Part shown: positions 1 through 55,787 of the stretch, in pieces
Layout of the letters: every line of letters begins with the position of its first letter
How positions within the stretch are numbered: position 1 is the first letter of the stretch
Virus record (IMG/VR): IMGVR_UViG_3300043446_003193
Location: 124,001-188,000 of that record
DNA: 64,000 bases
Direction: 5' to 3' (one strand)
The notes under the pieces: model-generated
The model's input: only the letters and a program-made list of their open reading frames with translations
The model's database searches: none
Told to the model about the DNA's origin: nothing
Program-made: the position numbers and the translations under genes

Positions 1-1878
1 TCCAATATATAAATCATCCCAAAGATGTGTAGGGTCTCCTAAACTATATGCACTATATGTTACATTAGTTGCAGGTATTACATTTTGATTTAATGAATTT
101 AAGTAAGATGCAGTTAATGAATTTACTGCGTTTGAAGCAGTTACATATGCTATTGGTGTCCAACTTGCAGTATAAGGTGAACCTGCTGAAACTTGTAAAA
201 CATATCCTGCATAAGATGAACTAATAGAAGGTAAGTCACCACCTATTGTACCAATTGCCCAACCTGCTGCCGCTTCAGGGAATGTAATTAGAGATGAAGT
301 GTTATCCGTTAATACAATTGTTTGAGGAATTATTTTCTCGTAATTACTGTCAAATGTTTGGATATTAACAAATCTATCTCCAAAATTATGTTCAAATCTC
401 CATTCTAAAGAAGATGTAAAACTTTGTTTAACTGTTCTACCATTCACTTCAATTATACCACCAATACCTGCTACCGCGTATCCAGCAACTGGTGTACCAA
501 ATTCTAAAACTAAAGTATTCACATCAGTTGCAGTAATGGTTTGTGGAAGAACTATTTGTCCGGAATTATTATAAACCGTTACATTTGGATATTGTACATT
601 TAAATTATGCGTGAATGTCCAAGTTGCTGCAGAGGTAGTTTGTGTATGTATTTTTCCACCTCCAGTTAATCCGGTCAATAGAGAACCATCACCTTTGAAT
701 GAACCAGTAAATGAACCAGTGAACGGGTCTGTTAAGGTTACAAATTGTGCAGATCCAGATATTAATGTAGGTTTTTCAGTTAATTCAGTAAATGTAATTG
801 GTGTACCTACTTGTCTATATCTTAAATCTAAAGATGCTGTTGTTTGTTCTGAACCACTAATAATTCCGCCTGGTTTATTTGCAATATTGTCCCAAGTTGT
901 TTGAGTTATTGAACCGCTTAAAACATATCTATTATCGTATGAAGCGGTCAATTGTGCAGATGAACTTACTAAACCATTTGATGCAGATATTGGGCCCGTT
1001 ACTTGTAAAGTACCATTAACTATTATTTTATTTCCACCCGTTTGAGTAATAATAGAATCGGAAATGTGGTCATCTCCACTTGCTACCGGAAGATATCCAG
1101 TTGTTAAACCAATTTCATTTCCCAAAGAACCCGTATTTTTAGGTCCTGCTATTAATATTGCCGAACTATATGCTGCTCCAGATGGATTTTCGTATATCCA
1201 ATGATTATTTACCGAATCCCACCAAAGAGAACCGGTTCCAGATGTACTTCCAGAATCTTGTACACTTATACCACCAAAACGAACTGCAGGTGTTGCTGTA
1301 TTTAATAAAACCGTATTTGTTCCAATACTTACTGCCGAACCCGTAATATTTTGAATTGATGATGTACCTTGAACAATTAAATTTTCAGTTACATATAAAG
1401 AACCACTCATTATTTGTGTTCCTTTAAATGTATTTGAACCAGTTGTTGCAAATGAAGATTCAATTACATCTAATCTTGTATCAATTGATGCGGATAAAAC
1501 ATTTGTACTTGCTGCACTTGCACTAAATGATGTTGCAACGGAGGAACTAAAGTCTCCAGTAACAGTTGAAACCGAAGCAGATAATGCTGAAATATTTGCA
1601 TTACTTGCACTTATTGATGTTGCAACGGAAGAAGAAAATGATTGTGTAAATGAATTAATAGCAGATAACGAAGTATCAACCGATGCCGATTTTGCTTCCA
1701 AAGAATTTAATCTCAATGCCTGTGAACCACTATCTGTTGATAATTCATTAAGCCTTTGATTAATTGAAGCGGAAGCAGCTAAAAACGAAGACGATACTGC
1801 TGTATATCTAGGTATTTCTGCTGTTTGTCCGGCTTGCTGTATTAAGGAACCGGTTATAATAGGACTATCTAAAATCAT
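1..1878 (-). CDS. Fibre/virion structural protein, truncated at the left window edge (not in ORF track)
   Basis: ATG at 1878 (MILDSPIITGSLIQQAGQ...). Segments I translated stay in this frame towards position 1. Shares ATTGSNTF, NLIVQG..NIG.N...RFGG..DSGS, QTTWDNIANKP and TWTFTHNL modules with the neighbouring fibre genes. Confidence 0.85.
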   Translation of the reverse strand, partial: MILDSPIITGSLIQQAGQTAEIPRYTAVSSSFLAASASINQRLNELSTDSGSQALRLNSLEAKSASVDTSLSAINSFTQSFSSSVATSISASNANISALSASVSTVTGDFSSSVATSFSASAASTNVLSASIDTRLDVIESSFATTGSNTFKGTQIMSGSLYVTENLIVQGTSSIQNITGSAVSIGTNTVLLNTATPAVRFGGISVQDSGSTSGTGSLWWDSVNNHWIYENPSGAAYSSAILIAGPKNTGSLGNEIGLTTGYLPVASGDDHISDSIITQTGGNKIIVNGTLQVTGPISASNGLVSSSAQLTASYDNRYVLSGSITQTTWDNIANKPGGIISGSEQTTASLDLRYRQVGTPITFTELTEKPTLISGSAQFVTLTDPFTGSFTGSFKGDGSLLTGLTGGGKIHTQTTSAATWTFTHNLNVQYPNVTVYNNSGQIVLPQTITATDVNTLVLEFGTPVAGYAVAGIGGIIEVNGRTVKQSFTSSLEWRFEHNFGDRFVNIQTFDSNYEKIIPQTIVLTDNTSSLITFPEAAAGWAIGTIGGDLPSISSSYAGYVLQVSAGSPYTASWTPIAYVTASNAVNSLTASYLNSLNQNVIPATNVTYSAYSLGDPTHLWDDLYIG

Positions 1879-1896
1879 TTCTCCGTTTTATTTAAG

Positions 1897-1905
1897 TATA
1901 AATAT
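1897..1905 (-). promoter_or_regulatory. Putative late promoter motif ATATTTATA
   Basis: Intergenic, 18 nt upstream of ATG 1878. Confidence 0.65.
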
Positions 1906-1912
1906 CTTTATG

Positions 1913-25398: not shown

Positions 25399-25432
25399 TA
25401 AAAAAAGAGGAGATATTTCTACCCCCTCTTTC
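25399..25432 (-). terminator. Intrinsic terminator after the major capsid gene
   Basis: Minus strand AAGAGGGGGTA-GAAA-TATCTCCTCTTTTTT. Confidence 0.85.
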
Positions 25433-25457
25433 TTTTTATTACTCTAATCCGTTAAGA

Positions 25458-27083
25458 TTATAAAGTGTTTAAACCGTTTACGATAATCTTACCGTAGAAT
25501 TCTGGTCTAACGATCTTCTTAGCGTAACGAGTCATAACTCCTCTTCTTGGAGTGAAGTTAGTTGGATCGTACACTAAAGGAGTCATAATCAATGGAACAT
25601 ATGGAGCGTATACAGCACCTGTCTCAAAGAAGTTAGAACCTTTAAATCCTAATAAGATAACGTTCTCAGTCATGTATGGGTTTTTGTAAACATCATATCT
25701 GTTAGAGATAGAACCGATGTTAGTTACACCTGCAGCAAATTGTAAAGCATCTTTACCAGGATTTGCAGAGAAACCGTTCATTGATTCCAAAATAGTTGCA
25801 ACGTTTGGAGATACTACTACGAAGTTAGCACCACCTCTCATTGTTAACTGATGGATTTTGTTAGATACCTTTTGTAATTTGATACCTAAAGTTTGATACC
25901 AAGTACTCTTAGTGTATGCAGAAGCAGCTGCTGCGTTAGAATCTACCGCGAATGCTCCAGTTGCACTATTGTAATCGTATCCAACTCTTGCATCCCAATA
26001 ATCAGTTGTGAATGCGTTTTGTTGTAACATTTCTAAGATTTCCAAATCAATTTCTAAAGAAATGTACTCAGATAACATTTGAGTTAACTCAGCTTCAGCG
26101 TCTACACTATGGTAAGCATTTAAGTCTTGAGCTAATTCAGGAGTCCAAATTGCTTTCAACTTACGAGTCTTAGCAACGATTGGTTCTGATTTCAATTCTA
26201 ATTCAATTTCTGGAATGTCTAAGTTTGAACCTTTATCTTCAAAGTCACCTCTGTTTTCAGCAGATGGTTGCTTATGATAAGATAATGTAGCACCACCAGC
26301 ACTTACACCACCTGCAGATCCTGTACCGTAGAATTCTACTGAAGTACCATTGATCTTAGTGTATTTAGGATAGTAGTTGTTAGCTGTGATAGAACCAGAT
26401 TGTAAGATTTCAAATGCTCTTACACCGTTCCAATCAGCATCAGTTGGTAAAGTTACAGTTACTTTTTTGATACCACCAGCTGCTAAAGAAGCAGATAAGT
26501 CAGCGTCAAAATTGATATCAGCCCAAGATGCAGTTGCAACTGTTGCGTCTAACGCTGCTGATGTATCGTTGATTGTATAACCAAATCTTCCAGCTCCGTA
26601 AAGACCACCTTCAGCAACTTGAGTAGAACCCAATTTGTTACCGTGAGATGCTTCAGAGTTGTAAGTTAAGTTATCCTTACCGAAAGTACCACCTTTACCG
26701 AATAATGAATTACCGTTAAAGTCTGGGTTACCAGCTTGTGAAGTACCATATTTGAAGTCCATGTAGAAAATAAGACCTGAAGGTAAGTTCATAGGTTGTA
26801 CTGAAACGAATTCTTTAGCTGCGATAGAACCGAAGATTCTTCTTACTAAAGGTAACGCAACACCAGCCCATTCTTCAGAACCTGCTGAAGTACCTGTTCT
26901 TGTAGCCTCATCCAATAATTGCTTAGCTTGGTTTTCTAACATTACTGCCATACCATGCTTAGTAGTTTCTGAACCTACTCCTTCAAGTAAGCCAGTTTTT
27001 TCCCATTTGCTTTTCAAACCTCTAGTTTGCTCAAGCATTACGCTCTGTGGGTTAGCGCCTGTCATTAATTTTTTTAAGTCCAT
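25458..27083 (-). CDS. Major capsid protein (T4 gp23 family)
   Basis: LPLVRR, VSVQPMNLPSGLIFY, AKTRKLKA.WT.ELAQDL.A.H..DAEAEL, YAPYVPL, F.PRRGVMTRY are gp23 signatures. Confidence 0.97.
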   Translation of the reverse strand: MDLKKLMTGANPQSVMLEQTRGLKSKWEKTGLLEGVGSETTKHGMAVMLENQAKQLLDEATRTGTSAGSEEWAGVALPLVRRIFGSIAAKEFVSVQPMNLPSGLIFYMDFKYGTSQAGNPDFNGNSLFGKGGTFGKDNLTYNSEASHGNKLGSTQVAEGGLYGAGRFGYTINDTSAALDATVATASWADINFDADLSASLAAGGIKKVTVTLPTDADWNGVRAFEILQSGSITANNYYPKYTKINGTSVEFYGTGSAGGVSAGGATLSYHKQPSAENRGDFEDKGSNLDIPEIELELKSEPIVAKTRKLKAIWTPELAQDLNAYHSVDAEAELTQMLSEYISLEIDLEILEMLQQNAFTTDYWDARVGYDYNSATGAFAVDSNAAAASAYTKSTWYQTLGIKLQKVSNKIHQLTMRGGANFVVVSPNVATILESMNGFSANPGKDALQFAAGVTNIGSISNRYDVYKNPYMTENVILLGFKGSNFFETGAVYAPYVPLIMTPLVYDPTNFTPRRGVMTRYAKKIVRPEFYGKIIVNGLNTL

Positions 27084-27106
27084 TGTATGTACTTTTAATT
27101 GTTTGT

Positions 27107-28324
27107 TTATTTAATAATACCTGCTAATTTCTTAAATCTGTCAGAAAAATCAGCTGATTCAGCAATTACTTGCTTAGCTGCTGCTGGCTTAGTAGATTTT
27201 ACTGCTTTGCTAGCGATTCCTTCAGAAATAGATTTTTTAGTAGATTTGTTAGATGAAGAATATTTGAAATTCTCTGCTAATGTAGAGTAAACCAATTTAA
27301 CTTCTCTAACTGATTTTGTTCTATCCAAAGTTTCAATCACTTTAACTTTTTGTTCGTTAGTCATGTTGTGTGCTCTGAATAATTTGTTAGCGAATAACAA
27401 CTTAGCGTTCAATAAGTTCACTTCGTTGATTGTTTTTTGTAAAGACTTGATAGTTTTGTAAGCTTCGTTAAGTTCTTTTTCTTTTTCTTCTTCTTCAGCT
27501 TCGTCAACTTTCTCTTTATCGTCTTTCATATCCGCTTCCATTTCACGTAAGATTTCTTCTAAATCAACAACGTCTTTGTCATCTTCTTTAGATTCTTCTT
27601 CGTTGGTTACAACCACTTTAGGGTCTTCACCTTTGTCTGTACCTGCTTCAGAACCATCTGCTAAATTTTCGTTTTTAGCTTCTTCATCTTCTTCAGCTTC
27701 GTACATAGGTTTTTCTTCTTCTTCAGAATCTTCACCTTCTAATTGAGCTTCTAATTCTCTGATGATAGCTTCTAAGTCCATGTCATCTTCTGTTTCTTCT
27801 TCTTCAGAACCAGTTACGTCATAGTCTTCACCATCTTCTTCTCCTGTCTCATCCGCACCCGCAGTAAATGCTGGTAATTCTTCTTCAGAATCTTCTCCTT
27901 CTAATTCTGCTAATCTAGCTTTTAATTGAGCGATTTCGTCTTGTTTTGCAACTTCGTCATCACCAGCTTGATCATCAGCGAAAGGATTTTCTTCTTCAGA
28001 GATATCTGCTACCTTTTTGAAATCATCAACTTGTGCACCTGGTTCGCCAGATGTTGTTTCAGTTGAACCTGCTTCAAATTCAGTATCAGCGTCTAATGTA
28101 GGATTAGATGTAGATGCACCAATGTTTGATGAATCTAATTCTTCGTCAACTTTTTCAGCTTCTTTATCTTCAGCTTCAGCTTCTGCTCTTAACTTTGCAG
28201 ATAAGATAGATTGAAGTCTTGGAGTGAAAGCCTCTTCAAGTGCGATTTTTGCGTTTGCTAAAGCAGTTTCTTTTACAGCTTTGGCATCAGCGATTGCTTC
28301 TTTCAATAATTTTGAATTTGCCAT
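27107..28324 (-). CDS. Prohead core scaffold protein (gp22-like)
   Basis: Very acidic coiled-coil protein directly upstream of the capsid gene; ends FKKLAGIIK. Confidence 0.75.
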   Translation of the reverse strand: MANSKLLKEAIADAKAVKETALANAKIALEEAFTPRLQSILSAKLRAEAEAEDKEAEKVDEELDSSNIGASTSNPTLDADTEFEAGSTETTSGEPGAQVDDFKKVADISEEENPFADDQAGDDEVAKQDEIAQLKARLAELEGEDSEEELPAFTAGADETGEEDGEDYDVTGSEEEETEDDMDLEAIIRELEAQLEGEDSEEEEKPMYEAEEDEEAKNENLADGSEAGTDKGEDPKVVVTNEEESKEDDKDVVDLEEILREMEADMKDDKEKVDEAEEEEKEKELNEAYKTIKSLQKTINEVNLLNAKLLFANKLFRAHNMTNEQKVKVIETLDRTKSVREVKLVYSTLAENFKYSSSNKSTKKSISEGIASKAVKSTKPAAAKQVIAESADFSDRFKKLAGIIK

Positions 28325-28470
28325 CTTTTTTCCTTAAATTTTGTTGTGAAGTTATTCTTGTAGGGAACTCCAATGTAATTATGTTGATTGTTCGGTCACA
28401 CCTTATAAGAGAAGGGTATTCATTAACCAACGATGTCTTGTAATCTTATAATAAAAATAAGATATTTGAG

Positions 28471-28479
28471 AATAAATAT
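28471..28479 (-). promoter_or_regulatory. Putative late promoter motif variant ATATTTATT
   Basis: Upstream of the scaffold-capsid unit. Confidence 0.55.
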
Positions 28480-28489
28480 ATAAAATTTT

Positions 28490-28510
28490 TAGAAAACTAA
28501 AGAAAATTAG
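28490..28510 (+). repeat. AGAAAACTAA-AGAAAATTAG tandem (candidate operator)
   Basis: TAGAAAACTAAAGAAAA (17 nt) is identical to 55574-55590. Confidence 0.7.
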
Positions 28511-28686
28511 TGATTATACTTATTTTTTCTTATAGTTTCTTCTTTTTGTAACCTTTTTTTAATAGAAGGTTTAGTAAAGTTCTTTCTTTCTCTAAGTTCT
28601 TCTATTTGTTTTATGGACTGAACTTTCTTTTTATATTCCTTTAATGCCCACTCTATGTTTCCGTTTTTCACGTTAACTATTAACAT
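28507..28686 (-). CDS. rpsU: 30S ribosomal protein bS21 (phage-encoded; 59 aa, absent from ORF track)
   Basis: My translation: MLIVNVKNGNIEWALKEYKKKVQSIKQIEELRERKNFTKPSIKKRLQKEETIRKNKYNH*. It has the S21 pattern V...NIE.ALK..K.K......ELR.R..F.KPS..R, with an MLI(I/V) start as in Bacteroidota S21. Confidence 0.9.
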   Translation of the reverse strand: MLIVNVKNGNIEWALKEYKKKVQSIKQIEELRERKNFTKPSIKKRLQKEETIRKNKYNH

Positions 28687-28692
28687 AACTAA

Positions 28693-28992
28693 TTAATATG
28701 GTGTTTGATATTCCAATTGTTTTTTTAATTCTCTTTCGTATTCCTTTTCAATTTTATCTAAATCATCTTTAGCAGATTTAATATCTTCTTGATGTTTTTT
28801 TAATTGATAAAGATATTGGTTTTTTCTATCTTCGTTTTGTTCATCAAAATATGCTTTACTCATCATTTTTTGACGAGTTGTTAATCCTTCATATTTTCTT
28901 ATAGCATCAATGTATGCAGATGATGCTTTTCTAAAACCGGCTCTTATTTTAACTGCTTCTTCTTTTAAAGGAATTAGATTTATTAGTTTCAT
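28693..28992 (-). CDS. Putative internal head protein
   Basis: Coiled-coil 99 aa beginning MKLINLIPLKEE. Confidence 0.5.
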   Translation of the reverse strand: MKLINLIPLKEEAVKIRAGFRKASSAYIDAIRKYEGLTTRQKMMSKAYFDEQNEDRKNQYLYQLKKHQEDIKSAKDDLDKIEKEYERELKKQLEYQTPY

Positions 28993-29363
28993 TATTGTAA
29001 ATTAACTAATTTATATTTTGTAGAATATAATAAAGTTACAATCGTATCAATATCGTTTTGTAACCAACTCATTTGTAACTTTTCATCTTTTCTTAATTTC
29101 TCAACTGCTTTACAAAGTTTTTCAAAATAAGAAATTATATTTTTGATATCATTGTTAGTATCAATACCACTTACTGGTTGAACTTTGATTAATCCGTACT
29201 GTCCTTGATATGCTTCCACTAATCCATCTACTAATCCACCAATTGAATCGTAATATGTACCTAAAGCCAAATGAGCAGATAATGCACCAACACCTTTAAC
29301 TCCCCAATGGAAAGCATGTGCTTGTGTTCTACTGTGTAATAATAATGATGCTAATTGTTCCAT
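28992..29363 (-). CDS. Ferritin/Dps-like four-helix protein (DUF5856-like)
   Basis: QAH.FHW...HLALG.YYD.I..LVD.LVE.YQG.YG...LQN.ID.I..L...T.YKL pattern. Confidence 0.75.
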   Translation of the reverse strand: MEQLASLLLHSRTQAHAFHWGVKGVGALSAHLALGTYYDSIGGLVDGLVEAYQGQYGLIKVQPVSGIDTNNDIKNIISYFEKLCKAVEKLRKDEKLQMSWLQNDIDTIVTLLYSTKYKLVNLQ

Positions 29364-29792
29364 TTATTTACAAGTTTTACATTCGTTAATTCCCAGTCTT
29401 TGTTTCATCACATCTTCAGAAATATCTGCTATTTCAAAATATCTTCCTAATACATGTCCCATATCTTCATAAAGAGCCTCTAATCTTTGTTGTTGTGCTC
29501 TAGCTTCTACTGCTTCCTTTTCAAATGAAGTTTGTAACTTTTTAAGTTCATTCATATTTCTCTTAATAGTTACTCTATCAAACCAATCTCCACCTTCTCT
29601 TAAAGTATATTCTTGTGCTGCATCTGCAATACCACCCAATGTTTCTGCAATTTGCATAATATCAGATTTTCTACTCATACCTTCTCTATGTTGGTTATAT
29701 GTAGAAATTATTTCTAAGAAGTGTTTTTTTAATTCAGAAGGCAATTGTTCTAATTGTTCTTCTTCTTTCAATAAATCTTTTAACTTTATCAT
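29364..29792 (-). CDS. Putative internal head protein
   Basis: 142 aa helical, begins MIKLKDLLKEEE. Confidence 0.5.
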   Translation of the reverse strand: MIKLKDLLKEEEQLEQLPSELKKHFLEIISTYNQHREGMSRKSDIMQIAETLGGIADAAQEYTLREGGDWFDRVTIKRNMNELKKLQTSFEKEAVEARAQQQRLEALYEDMGHVLGRYFEIADISEDVMKQRLGINECKTCK

Positions 29793-30067
29793 CTATGTAC
29801 GATTTTATACTTTTTTAATCTTTGTACTGCCTGAGATAAGTCCTGTGGAGTCATATCTAATGCGTCTACTAATTTAGCAATAACTAATTGTTCTTTTTTT
29901 CTTGGTAAGTTATATGATTTAATAACTTGCAATGCTCTATCTAAAAATCTTTCTACTTTAGAAGGTAGATTAACATCCATATCTTCCAAATCTTCATTCA
30001 TTTCTTCTTTTGAAAGAACTACTGCAGTTGTATAATTAGCCGGTATTAAGTTTATTAACTTTGCCAT
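29789..30067 (-). CDS. Putative internal head protein
   Basis: 92 aa, begins MAKLINLIP; ATGA overlap with the next gene. Confidence 0.5.
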   Translation of the reverse strand: MAKLINLIPANYTTAVVLSKEEMNEDLEDMDVNLPSKVERFLDRALQVIKSYNLPRKKEQLVIAKLVDALDMTPQDLSQAVQRLKKYKIVHR

Positions 30068-55491: not shown

Positions 55492-55502
55492 TAATCTTTT
55501 TA

Positions 55503-55511
55503 CATAAATAT
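55503..55511 (-). promoter_or_regulatory. Putative late promoter motif variant ATATTTATG
   Basis: Upstream of 55491. Confidence 0.55.
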
Positions 55512-55532
55512 TCTCAAAAAAATAATCTTCAC

Positions 55533-55541
55533 ATATTTATA
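55533..55541 (+). promoter_or_regulatory. Putative late promoter motif ATATTTATA (plus strand)
   Basis: Upstream of the only plus-strand gene, 55602. Confidence 0.6.
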
Positions 55542-55544
55542 TAA

Positions 55545-55594
55545 AGAAAACTAATAAATACTATATTGTATTATAGAAAACTAAAGAAAACTAA
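55545..55594 (+). repeat. Three AGAAAACTAA direct repeats (candidate operator)
   Basis: Copies start at 55545, 55575 and 55585. Confidence 0.8.
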
Positions 55595-55601
55595 ATAAGT
55601 T

Positions 55602-55787
55602 ATGAAATACGCAATGTTGCAAATTAAAAAAGAAACCCATGAACTTCTCAAATCATATTGTGAAGAACACGGGTTTAAAATGGGTAGTTTAGTTGAAAAT
55701 CTAATCAAAAAACACGTTGGTGTTTCAAAACCTCAATCAGGTGTGTTGAAGGCTGATAAAGTTACTGTTAGAAATCAATCTTACTAA
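55602..55787 (+). CDS. Small DNA-binding regulator, ribbon-helix-helix-like
   Basis: Only credible plus-strand gene. A short beta strand (YAMLQI) precedes two helices (ETHELLKSYCEEHG.KM..LVE.LI); it has its own upstream ATATTTATA motif. Confidence 0.7.
   Translation: MKYAMLQIKKETHELLKSYCEEHGFKMGSLVENLIKKHVGVSKPQSGVLKADKVTVRNQSY

What the first reader, a model, noticed from the sequence alone, without database searches (positions are those of the whole stretch)
28325..28470. Long structured leader with an SD-like site ahead of the scaffold-capsid unit
Seen: about 145 nt of non-coding leader, the longest intergenic stretch in the window. Minus-strand pairings include ATCTTAT/ATAAGAT, GTTGGTT/AATCAAC enclosing CCTT/AAGG, and GGAGTT/AACTTC. 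TAAGGA lies 6 nt before the ATG, whereas the capsid gene has no SD. It sits immediately downstream of bS21. Established: Bacteroidota ribosomes occlude the anti-SD using bS21, bS18 and bS6. Inference: a cis-regulatory RNA that may tie head production to ribosomes carrying the phage bS21.
Basis: partly seen in the sequence, partly recalled or inferred. Interest (0 to 1): 0.65.

Follow-up and report, generated by a model that had tools for sequence, protein, structure and literature searches.

The report
Conserved structured leader of phage scaffold-capsid mRNA
The non-coding stretch ahead of the head-scaffold gene of this T4-like freshwater phage is a real folded RNA leader, kept almost unchanged in hundreds of related phages and matching no Rfam family, but it also occurs in complete phage genomes that have no ribosomal protein bS21 gene, so it cannot depend on that protein.

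Summary
Window 28325-28506 (minus strand) is a 182-nt gap between a phage bS21 gene and a gp22-like scaffold gene. It holds a late-promoter-like box (ATATTTATT, 28479-28471) followed by a leader of about 140 nt with three hairpins, all supported by compensatory changes.

- **Conservation.** The central hairpin (28431-28383) has near-invariant internal loops. It is the best conserved DNA in the region: median 96% identity, against 79-80% for the bS21 and capsid genes.
- **Expression.** Metatranscriptome contigs from four studies cover the leader, scaffold and capsid genes but almost none of the bS21 gene.
- **Spread.** Every related locus with enough upstream sequence has exactly one copy, always before the scaffold gene. 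Diverged versions occur across a wide T4-like lineage, including cultured Flavobacterium phage immuto and Microcystis phage Mel-JY01.
- **Novelty.** Rfam 15 has no match, and 154 Flavobacteriales genomes have none.

bS21 is often adjacent, but the leader persists in two near-complete metagenomic genomes and in complete phage immuto, none of which has a bS21 gene. The SD-like site is missing from a quarter of close relatives.

My best reading is a cis-acting control element of the late scaffold-capsid mRNA, whose invariant loop is recognised by a trans factor. Scaffold autoregulation, as in P22, is my leading guess and is untested.

The parts
28507..28686 (-). Phage bS21 gene (59 aa). It is the upstream neighbour and not part of the leader.
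   Evidence: Pfam Ribosomal_S21, E 5.5e-13. Closest bacterial homologues are almost all from Bacteroidota, 53-60% identity. RNA-library contig depth here is about 1, against hundreds over the leader.
28490..28505 (-). Upstream motif TTTCTTTAGTTTTCTA, a possible operator or UP-like element.
   Evidence: Nearly invariant in relatives. A second copy lies at window 55570-55589, upstream of the 2031-aa tail-fibre-like gene and next to a divergent RHH-like ORF.
28471..28479 (-). Late-promoter-like box ATATTTATT. The inferred transcription start is near 28465.
   Evidence: The consensus ATATTTATA occurs 38 times on the sense strand, 31 of them in the 7% of the genome that is non-coding, and only 2 times antisense. 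Copies lie 3-35 nt before ATGs. All 7 copies of the variant ATATTTATT are intergenic. RNA contigs vanish upstream of about 28481. The start site itself is inferred by analogy with T4 late promoters.
28443..28463 (-). HP1: hairpin ATCTTAT/ATAAGAT, predicted to sit at the 5' end of the transcript.
   Evidence: 5 of 7 pairs show compensatory changes (TT/AA, TC/GA, CC/GG, CT/AG, AACTCAC/GTGAGTT).
28383..28431 (-). Core hairpin. P1 is GTTGGT/ATCAAC. The 5' loop is UAAUGAAU. P2 is ACCCUU/AAGG(U)GU with a variable apical loop. The 3' loop is GACCGAACA.
   Evidence: P1 has 4 compensatory pairs. P2 is rewritten as CTAC/GTAG in L025 and TCTT/AAGA in the L321 clade, and the bulge shifts in L020, L330 and L285. 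The loops are almost invariant (UAAYGAAU / GAMCGAACA). Median 96% nt identity, the highest in the region. One copy per genome.
28347..28372 (-). HP3: hairpin UGGAGUU/AACUUCA with conserved AUU 5' flank and AAUAA at the 3' end of the loop.
   Evidence: One compensatory pair and one G-U to A-U change in the close clade. About 25 different complementary arm pairs in the wide family; found in 55 of 55 distinct leaders against 5.8 expected in shuffles.
28325..28346 (-). Unpaired A-rich tail with SD-like TAAGGA (28336-28331), 6 nt before the ATG.
   Evidence: Read directly from the sequence. TAAGGAR is present in 62 of 82 distinct close leaders, 3-10 nt from the ATG, and absent in 20.
27107..28324 (-). 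gp22-like scaffold gene (405 aa, acidic). This is the regulated gene.
   Evidence: No Pfam or PHROG hit. It lies between the prohead protease (30659-30069, PHROG E 4.6e-53) and the capsid gene. Its N-terminal ~40 aa and C-terminal ~110 aa are conserved in distant T4-like phages. The scaffold role is inferred from position and composition.
25458..27083 (-). Major capsid protein gene (gp23 family), 23 nt after the scaffold stop and probably co-transcribed.
   Evidence: Pfam Gp23, E 1.2e-77. No promoter box and no SD in the 23-nt spacer.
25400..25435 (-). Intrinsic terminator that closes the scaffold-capsid unit.
   Evidence: Terminator scan: 16-pair stem plus T7 run; 0.0 expected in shuffles.

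Best explanation
The region is the 5' untranslated leader (about 140 nt) of the late scaffold-capsid mRNA.

**Proposed sequence of events**
- Transcription starts a few bases after a T4-type late-promoter box (ATATTTATT, 28479-28471).
- It runs through the scaffold and capsid genes to a terminator at 25435-25400.
- The leader folds into a 5'-terminal hairpin (HP1), a central hairpin whose internal loops are almost invariant, and a third hairpin (HP3).
- It ends in an unpaired A-rich ribosome-loading stretch.

**How I think it works**
- It acts in cis after transcription.
- The 5' hairpin protects this very abundant mRNA.
- The invariant loop of the central hairpin is a docking site for a trans-acting factor that sets how much scaffold, and with it capsid protein, is made.
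- My leading candidate for that factor is free scaffolding protein acting through its conserved N-terminus, as in phage P22.

**Shown:** the structure, its conservation, its single gene context, and its presence in RNA libraries.

**Inferred:** the start site, the stabilising role, and the existence and identity of the factor.
For: **Structure**
- Four helices with compensatory changes.
- The same helices come from RNAalifold on an unfitted alignment.
- G-U pairs work only on the gene strand, which points to RNA rather than DNA.

**Selection**
- The core has median 96% identity, against 79% for the bS21 coding sequence and 80% for the capsid gene.
- Indels that are not multiples of three rule out a conserved ORF through the core.

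**Transcript**
- Ordinary late genes have the box 3-35 nt from the ATG; here it is 146 nt away.
- There is a terminator after the capsid gene.
- In four metatranscriptomes from four studies, contigs cover the capsid gene, the scaffold gene and the leader. One contig spans 28295-28417 at depth 803. Depth falls to 0.6-1.2 over 28482-29151.

**Specificity**
- Exactly one model hit per related locus, always before the scaffold gene (61 hits; 63).
- One copy in the genome.
- None in 154 Flavobacteriales genomes.

**Wide family**
- It includes LR756508, Mel-JY01 and immuto, and 55 distinct leaders in total.
- In those leaders the core-type hairpin begins 4-11 nt after the promoter box.

**Possible cognate protein**
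- The scaffold N-terminus (..LLKEAIADAKAV..) is conserved across the same range while the middle of the protein is not.
Against: - There is no direct evidence for any bound factor.
- The scaffold protein is strongly acidic, which does not favour RNA binding.
- No alternative pairing that would hide the ribosome-binding stretch was seen, so the way binding would change output is unknown.
- Folding energy is no better than shuffles (z = 0.18).
- RNA evidence comes from assembled contigs, which show neither strand nor ends, and DNA carry-over cannot be fully excluded.
- The start site is inferred, not mapped.
- Sequence conservation of GAAUAC next to the promoter in most family members could partly reflect a transcription-initiation signal rather than an RNA function.
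Confidence: 0.5

Rival explanations
1. The leader and its SD-like site couple scaffold and capsid translation to ribosomes that carry, or are remodelled by, the phage bS21 encoded just upstream. Alternatively, bS21 itself binds the leader.
For: - The order bS21, leader, scaffold, capsid is widespread: 119 of 139 close loci, 37 of 54 distant loci, and LR756508.
- The host type is SD-blind. This rests on Jha 2020 (PMC7797042), McNutt 2023 (PMC9976891) and Arpin 2026 (PMC13000457).
- The SD-like site is commoner where bS21 is adjacent (56 of 66 against 6 of 16). Independent pairs on the capsid tree lean the same way (4.9 against 0.5).
- Core-type hairpins were detected in 30 of 35 bS21-adjacent distant leaders, against 8 of 15 without.
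Against: - The leader is intact in genomes with no bS21 at all: G159, G163 and cultured phage immuto.
- The SD-like site is lost in 20 of 82 close leaders and absent in immuto.
- The association is not significant once relatedness is allowed for, and the two features are physically linked.
- bS21 RNA is at least 100-fold below leader RNA in the libraries.
- The SD-like site pairs over 6-7 nt, not the 13-bp helix that displaces bS21 on rpsU mRNA.
- In the wide family SD is the norm for other genes too.
Confidence: 0.12
2. A factor-independent expression cassette, like the T7 gene 10 leader. A 5' hairpin gives mRNA stability and an unstructured A/U-rich enhancer gives very high translation, with no regulatory input.
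For: - It heads the most abundantly needed late proteins.
- A 5'-proximal hairpin sits right after the promoter box in nearly all family members.
- The ribosome-loading region is open and A-rich, which suits Bacteroidota-type initiation (Baez 2019, PMC6847099, listed).
Against: - Stability hairpins need shape, not sequence. Here about 17 loop nucleotides are nearly invariant while the stems are free to change.
- The flanks GAAUAC and GU.ACCGA persist across phages whose capsid proteins are only about 50% identical.
Confidence: 0.2
3. A riboswitch. The central hairpin is an aptamer for a small molecule or ion that reports the state of the infected cell.
For: Invariant internal-loop nucleotides framed by covarying helices are typical of small aptamers.
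Against: - No Rfam family matched, even at E up to 10.
- It has a single gene context, is found only in phages, and has no bacterial copies in 154 genomes.
- No expression platform or alternative pairing with the ribosome-binding stretch was seen.
- The lower internal loop is not conserved in distant members.
Confidence: 0.08
4. A processing site (RNase III or RNase E type) or a separate small RNA released from the gap, rather than a translational leader.
For: - Irregular hairpins with internal loops serve as RNase III sites in T7 late mRNAs (my own knowledge, not checked here).
- Contig coverage in the leader is patchy.
Against: - The stems are only 6 bp each, short for RNase III.
- A contig runs unbroken from the core into the scaffold coding region (28295-28417).
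- There is no terminator between the leader and the ATG.
Confidence: 0.06

Closest known systems
Translational autoregulation of phage P22 scaffolding protein (gp8)
   Same: A scaffold gene whose output is thought to be controlled after transcription. The protein's N-terminus is implicated in that control. Here the scaffold N-terminus and the leader are conserved over the same phage range.
   Different: As far as I know, no defined RNA operator has been described for P22. The scaffold here is unrelated in sequence and very acidic. Binding is untested.
T7 gene 10 (capsid) leader and other 5'-hairpin mRNA stabilisers (ompA, T4 gene 32 leader)
   Same: A long leader on the main head-protein mRNA, with a hairpin at or near the 5' end followed by an open A/U-rich ribosome-loading stretch with or without SD.
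   Different: No sequence relationship. Here the loop sequences, not just the shapes, are under strong selection, and there are three hairpins. This comparison rests on my own knowledge, not on a tool result.
rpsU (bS21) SD-dependent autoregulation in Bacteroidia
   Same: The same kind of host and an SD-like site in an otherwise SD-free gene set, with a bS21 gene next door.
   Different: In rpsU the SD lies on the bS21 mRNA itself and forms a 13-bp helix with the anti-SD that excludes bS21. Here the site is 6-7 nt, sits on the scaffold mRNA, is dispensable in many relatives, and the phage bS21 gene has no SD of its own.
bS21-encoding freshwater Bacteroidetes phages (Chen et al. 2022, PMC9723584)
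   Same: bS21 lies among head genes (protease, capsid) in freshwater phages with Bacteroidota hosts, and head genes are highly expressed late.
   Different: Those phages are 293-331 kb with bS21 on the opposite strand. The paper never uses the words intergenic, UTR, promoter or motif. In the RNA libraries laid here bS21 is far below the head genes.
Rfam phage-associated and Bacteroidota cis-regulatory motifs
   Same: The same general kind: a short structured non-coding element found by comparative analysis.
   Different: No Rfam 15 family matches the window, the leader region at E up to 10, or ten distant family members.

Membership tests
Any Rfam 15 family | Covariance-model score at or above the family's gathering threshold | tested here: not met
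   0 hits in the whole window. In the 701-nt region only chance hits appeared, with E 3.5-9.5 and scores far below threshold. 0 hits in ten distant leader loci.
Structured cis-regulatory mRNA leader (generic) | Conserved secondary structure supported by compensatory base changes | tested here: met
   99.2% of cells paired, 8 pairs with changes on both sides, 0 of 500 shuffles as good, slid controls 35-44%. Core: 7 of 16 pairs compensatory. RNAalifold agrees.
Structured cis-regulatory mRNA leader (generic) | Lies on the mRNA, between the promoter and the start codon of the regulated gene | tested here: inconclusive
   Promoter-like box at 28479-28471. RNA-library contigs run from the core into the coding region and stop upstream. 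Contigs show neither ends nor strand, and no 5' mapping is available.
Riboswitch | Aptamer joined to an expression platform with mutually exclusive pairings | tested here: not met
   No alternative pairing with the ribosome-binding stretch appears in single-sequence or alignment folds.
Riboswitch | Specific binding of a small ligand | not testable with these tools
   Needs in-line probing, SHAPE or ITC.
Bacteroidia rpsU-type SD/anti-SD autoregulation | Extended SD (a helix of about 13 bp with the 16S 3' tail) on the regulated mRNA | tested here: not met
   Only TAAGGA(R), 6-7 nt, is present, and it is absent in 20 of 82 relatives. The 16S 3' end of a Flavobacteriaceae genome is ...ACACCTCCTTT.
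Bacteroidia rpsU-type SD/anti-SD autoregulation | Dependence on the bS21 status of the ribosome | not testable with these tools
   Indirect only: the leader occurs in three phage genomes that lack bS21.
Intrinsic terminator (for HP1) | GC-rich stem followed by a U run | tested here: not met
   No terminator-like site in 27000-30000. The HP1 stem is AT-rich and is followed by UUACAAG in the window. Some relatives do have a U run.
T4-type late promoter | A single conserved -10-like box, strand-specific and enriched just upstream of late genes | tested here: met
   ATATTTATA: 38 sense-strand copies (31 in the 7% of the genome that is non-coding) against 2 antisense. The variant ATATTTATT is intergenic in 7 of 7 copies, including 28479-28471. 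Promoter activity itself is untested.
Ribosomal RNA mimic (r-protein operator type) | Sequence resemblance or complementarity to a 16S or 23S rRNA segment | tested here: not met
   Shared 8- and 9-mers with Algibacter 16S and 23S, in either sense, do not exceed shuffle expectations. Structural mimicry cannot be excluded.
P22-type scaffold autoregulation | Free scaffold protein lowers translation or stability of its own mRNA | not testable with these tools
   Only circumstantial: the scaffold N-terminus and the leader are conserved together.

The most novel reading that the evidence does not exclude
The leader, together with the phage bS21 gene that so often sits just upstream, forms an ancient head-gene expression module of T4-like phages. 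In it the invariant loop of the leader is read by ribosomes (or 30S platforms) that contain phage bS21, or by bS21 itself. This gives the scaffold-capsid mRNA privileged initiation late in infection. Lineages that lost bS21 would rely on the host protein.
Probability: 0.1. Interest if true: 0.9.

Novelty: new variant of a known kind. Interest (0 to 1): 0.62.

Why it matters
Scaffold and capsid proteins are the most heavily produced phage proteins, and their ratio decides whether heads assemble correctly. How T4-like phages outside E. coli set that ratio is unknown.

This is a sequence-defined RNA element with strong covariation. It was found in well over a hundred distinct environmental phage contigs and in two cultured phages, which grow on Flavobacterium and Microcystis. 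It therefore gives a concrete, testable handle on late-gene control.

It also bears on the open question of what phage-encoded bS21 is for. The element marks the gene next to bS21 in most of these phages. Natural bS21-less and SD-less variants already exist as controls.

If it turns out to be only a stabiliser and enhancer, it is still a useful expression part for Bacteroidota, where SD-based tools fail.

Tried and rejected
- **Rfam:** no match at gathering thresholds or at E up to 10.
- **tRNA or tmRNA:** none in the window.
- **Sigma-70 promoter and terminator scan of 27000-30000:** no more than chance.
- **Thermodynamic stability:** no better than shuffles (z = 0.18), so the case rests on covariation.
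- **Conserved small ORF through the leader:** rejected, because the indels are not multiples of three.
- **Bacterial origin or copies:** the core model found nothing in 3 plus 151 Flavobacteriales genomes, while the positive control scored 79.9 bits. This is a sample, not proof of absence.
- **rRNA mimicry or complementarity by shared k-mers:** within chance.
- **Second copies of the core in the phage genome:** none.
- **Full-length model R1 on immuto and LR756508:** no hit. Reading the sequences then showed diverged members.
- **bS21 and SD co-occurrence as evidence of function:** not significant after allowing for relatedness.
- **Transcript 5' end:** could not be read from the RNA data, because only assembled contigs were available.

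Full report
**Setting**

The window is bases 124001-188000 of a 209,443-bp IMG/VR virus record rated 100% complete, with 32% G+C. Almost all genes lie on the minus strand.

Around the finding the gene order is:
- portal, 34474-32726 (PHROG E 2.4e-66);
- prohead protease, 30659-30069 (E 4.6e-53);
- a DUF5856 gene, 29363-28992;
- a 99-aa ORF;
- bS21, 28686-28507 (Pfam E 5.5e-13);
- the 182-nt gap;
- a 405-aa acidic protein, 28324-27107, with no family match;
- the gp23-type major capsid protein, 27083-25458 (Pfam E 1.2e-77).

The 405-aa protein is called scaffold by position, by composition, and because its N- and C-terminal parts recur before the capsid gene of other T4-like phages. That assignment is an inference.

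**Host type**

Only 13 of 185 predicted genes have GGAG, GAGG or AGGA at -18..-4, against a 5.5% background. Upstream regions are A-rich at -11..-13 and at -3. This is the pattern described for Bacteroidia (papers listed). The nearest bacterial bS21 proteins are almost all from Bacteroidota, at 53-60% identity.

**The observation**

All the pairings and the TAAGGA site are present at the stated places. The capsid gene indeed has no SD-like sequence. The gap is the longest within the packed late-gene block. It is not the longest in the whole window, whose first 1.9 kb is ORF-poor.

**Conservation in close relatives**

A search with the capsid protein returned 80 viral contigs at 78-98% identity. 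Of these, 43 showed bS21, gap, scaffold, capsid in that order, with the gap held at 172-194 nt.

The gap aligns almost base for base. Measured against 33 distinct loci, median nucleotide identity to the window was:

| Segment | Median identity |
|---|---|
| 49-nt core | 96% |
| Promoter region | 91% |
| HP3 segment | 92% |
| First 150 nt of the scaffold gene | 90% |
| bS21 coding sequence | 79% |
| Scaffold interior | 75% |
| Capsid gene | 80% |

(all). A non-coding stretch that outlasts its coding neighbours is under its own selection.

**Structure**

On a plain MAFFT alignment of 29 leaders, the four helices gave 99.2% paired cells, against 35-44% when partners were slid. Eight pairs had changes on both sides, and no shuffle in 500 did as well. 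RNAalifold predicted the same helices from that alignment without being told them.

- **HP1.** It varies freely but stays paired: ATCTTAT/ATAAGAT, ATCTCAT/ATGAGAT, ATCCCAT/ATGGGAT, ATCCTAT/ATAGGAT, AACTCAC/GTGAGTT.
- **P1.** In 32 distinct cores gathered through the capsid gene, not through the motif, the outer helix shows four compensatory positions.
- **P2.** The inner helix is rewritten as CTAC/GTAG in one lineage and TCTT/AAGA in another. Its one-base bulge slides in three more.
- **Internal loops.** These are nearly fixed: UAAYGAAU on the 5' side and GAMCGAACA on the 3' side. The U-to-C change faces a G, so part of the 'loop' is probably paired.
- **Strand and coding.** Several pairs are G-U on the gene strand, which would be C-A on the other strand. 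This points to RNA made in the sense of the genes. Loop-length changes of one or two bases exclude a conserved reading frame.

**Transcript**

The genome has a clear late-promoter word, ATATTTATA. There are 38 sense-strand copies, 31 of them in the 7% of the genome that is non-coding, and only two antisense copies. The copies usually lie 3-35 nt before a start codon. The variant ATATTTATT is intergenic in all seven cases. One copy is at 28479-28471, 146 nt before the scaffold ATG.

This leader is therefore several times longer than an ordinary late leader in this phage, and HP1 would begin within a few bases of the inferred start. A strong terminator follows the capsid gene at 25435-25400.

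Assembled contigs from four metatranscriptomes of four studies lie on the capsid gene, the scaffold gene and the leader. One contig joins the core to the coding region at depth 803. The bins over bS21 and the genes upstream read 0-1.2. Contigs cannot give ends, strand or true levels. Even so, a drop of two orders of magnitude at the promoter box, in libraries that hold near-identical strains, fits a separate and very active late unit.

**Specificity**

- A covariance model of the whole leader hit once in each of the 61 related loci with enough upstream sequence, always before the scaffold gene.
- A core-only model did the same in 63 loci of a second set.
- The core-only model hit once in the phage genome.
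- It hit nowhere in 154 Flavobacteriales genomes.
- Rfam 15 has nothing similar.
- The paper that described bS21 phages of freshwater Bacteroidetes does not mention intergenic regions, UTRs or motifs.

**A much wider family**

In the 484-kb uncultured phage LR756508 a bS21 gene (Pfam E 3.5e-10) is followed by a 205-nt gap, then the scaffold and capsid genes. The gap reads GAATAC-[ACGTCAT...ATGACGT]-AACGAC, then TGGAGCT/AGTTCCA. It has the same plan with both helices fully rewritten.

Using that capsid protein, 80 more contigs at 49-66% identity were fetched. Of 69 loci with a scaffold ORF, 60 have at least 90 nt before it. These gaps share:
- a TATATTTATA-type box;
- 4-11 nt later, R-A-W-A-Y (usually GAAUAC) followed by a hairpin and then GU(A)ACCGA-like sequence;
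- a 7-bp hairpin with AUU before it and AAUAA closing its loop, with about 25 different complementary arm pairs;
- an SD-type site in 44 of 59.

The third hairpin was found in 55 of 55 distinct leaders, against 5.8 expected in dinucleotide shuffles. The core type was found in 43, against 10.9. Both together were found in 43, against 1.4.

Two cultured phages belong to the family:
- **Microcystis phage Mel-JY01** has AAATGAATAC-[TCTA..TAGA]-GTGAGAAAAC, then TAGAGTT/AACTCTA, then TGGAGA.
- **Flavobacterium phage vB_FspM_immuto_3-5A** has a member over which the database record places a 30-aa CDS.

The window's clade differs from most of the family by an extra 5' hairpin (HP1) and a lower helix (P1) around the core.

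**The bS21 link**

Adjacency is common, and it was already known that bS21 tends to lie a few genes from the protease and capsid genes. But the link is not obligatory.

- Twenty of 139 close loci lack an adjacent bS21. In them the DUF5856 gene, often with its own terminator, abuts the promoter region.
- Two near-complete genomes with the leader have no S21 match in six frames, while the window's genome and another bS21-bearing genome did match.
- The complete immuto genome has no S21 either, and its leader has no SD-like site.

All four combinations of bS21 and SD-like site occur (56, 10, 6 and 10 of 82 distinct leaders). On a capsid tree, pairs that differ in bS21 tend to differ in the SD-like site in the same direction (4.9 against 0.5 of 8). 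The sign test gives a median p of 0.125, and the two features are 200 nt apart, so they are inherited together.

In the wide family 43% of other genes carry an SD core. For many members the SD is simply the normal ribosome-binding site. In the SD-blind clade it may be a decaying inheritance.

**What it most likely does**

The combination points to recognition by a specific partner that travels with these phages:
- one gene context;
- phage-only distribution;
- a position at or near the mRNA 5' end;
- free-changing stems with fixed loop and flank sequence;
- an always-open ribosome-loading stretch.

I therefore read it as a cis-acting leader that stabilises the late scaffold-capsid mRNA and carries an operator for a trans factor.

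The scaffold protein is my first candidate. Its N-terminal forty residues are conserved over the same range as the leader while the rest drifts. P22 scaffold is reported to autoregulate its translation through its N-terminus. The protein's acidity argues against this, and nothing here tests binding.

A plain stability and enhancer cassette, a riboswitch, a processing site, and the bS21-coupled model remain as rivals, with the weights given above.

**Novelty and verdict**

The feature is real, strongly selected and widespread. It matches no Rfam family and is not described in the papers I could search. It is a new family within a known kind, the structured phage mRNA leader or operator.

The proposed dependence on phage bS21 and the SD-like site is contradicted by natural variants, though a looser evolutionary association is real.

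Noticed in passing
window 55492-55601 (minus strand) and 55602-55787 (+): The only plus-strand gene in the window is a 61-aa ORF with a weak, sub-threshold RepB-RCR_reg (ribbon-helix-helix-like) match (E 0.0017). It is divergent from a 2031-aa tail-fibre-like gene with a Peptidase_S74 C-terminus. The 110-nt gap between them holds three TTAGTTTTCT repeats and an ATATTTATT-type box. The same motif pair sits upstream of the scaffold leader (28505-28471), so the two may share an operator.
   Followed up: partly
L193 2938-3094 (Flavobacterium phage vB_FspM_immuto_3-5A, MW353176.1 about 125425-125581): The record annotates a 30-aa hypothetical CDS (immuto35A_202) across what is a diverged member of this leader family. 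It also names the scaffold gene 'DNA polymerase phi-like protein'. Both look like annotation artefacts.
   Followed up: partly
whole genome G000; within the window e.g. 63480, 61536, 42679, 38573, 32708, 25393, 18043, 17635, 15623: The late-promoter word ATATTTATA is strand-specific and intergenic (38 sense copies, 2 antisense). A second class, TTTGG-N17-19-TCGTATATT, precedes genes in the other half of the genome and resembles Bacteroidota -33/-7 promoters.
   Followed up: partly
window 25400-25435 (minus strand): A strong intrinsic terminator lies directly after the capsid gene, followed by a late-promoter box for the next gene.
   Followed up: yes
L100 4258-4487 and L045 2609-2836: Two relatives carry deletions at the edges of the leader. 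L100 loses the tail and the start of the scaffold gene. L045 loses the promoter region and the 5' arm of HP1, fusing the leader to the end of bS21. These may be assembly errors or defective variants.
   Followed up: no
L085, L117, L148, L176 (upstream of the leader): In bS21-less relatives the DUF5856 gene is followed by a hairpin with a T run (e.g. AATCCCAAAGAAATTTGGGATTTTT), placed directly before the TTTCTTTAGTTTTCT motif. In other words, the bS21 gene sits where a terminator sits in other relatives.
   Followed up: partly
window 1-1912: This stretch has only short, doubtful ORFs and gaps of up to 386 nt. It has no Rfam or tRNA hit. I did not examine it further.
   Followed up: no
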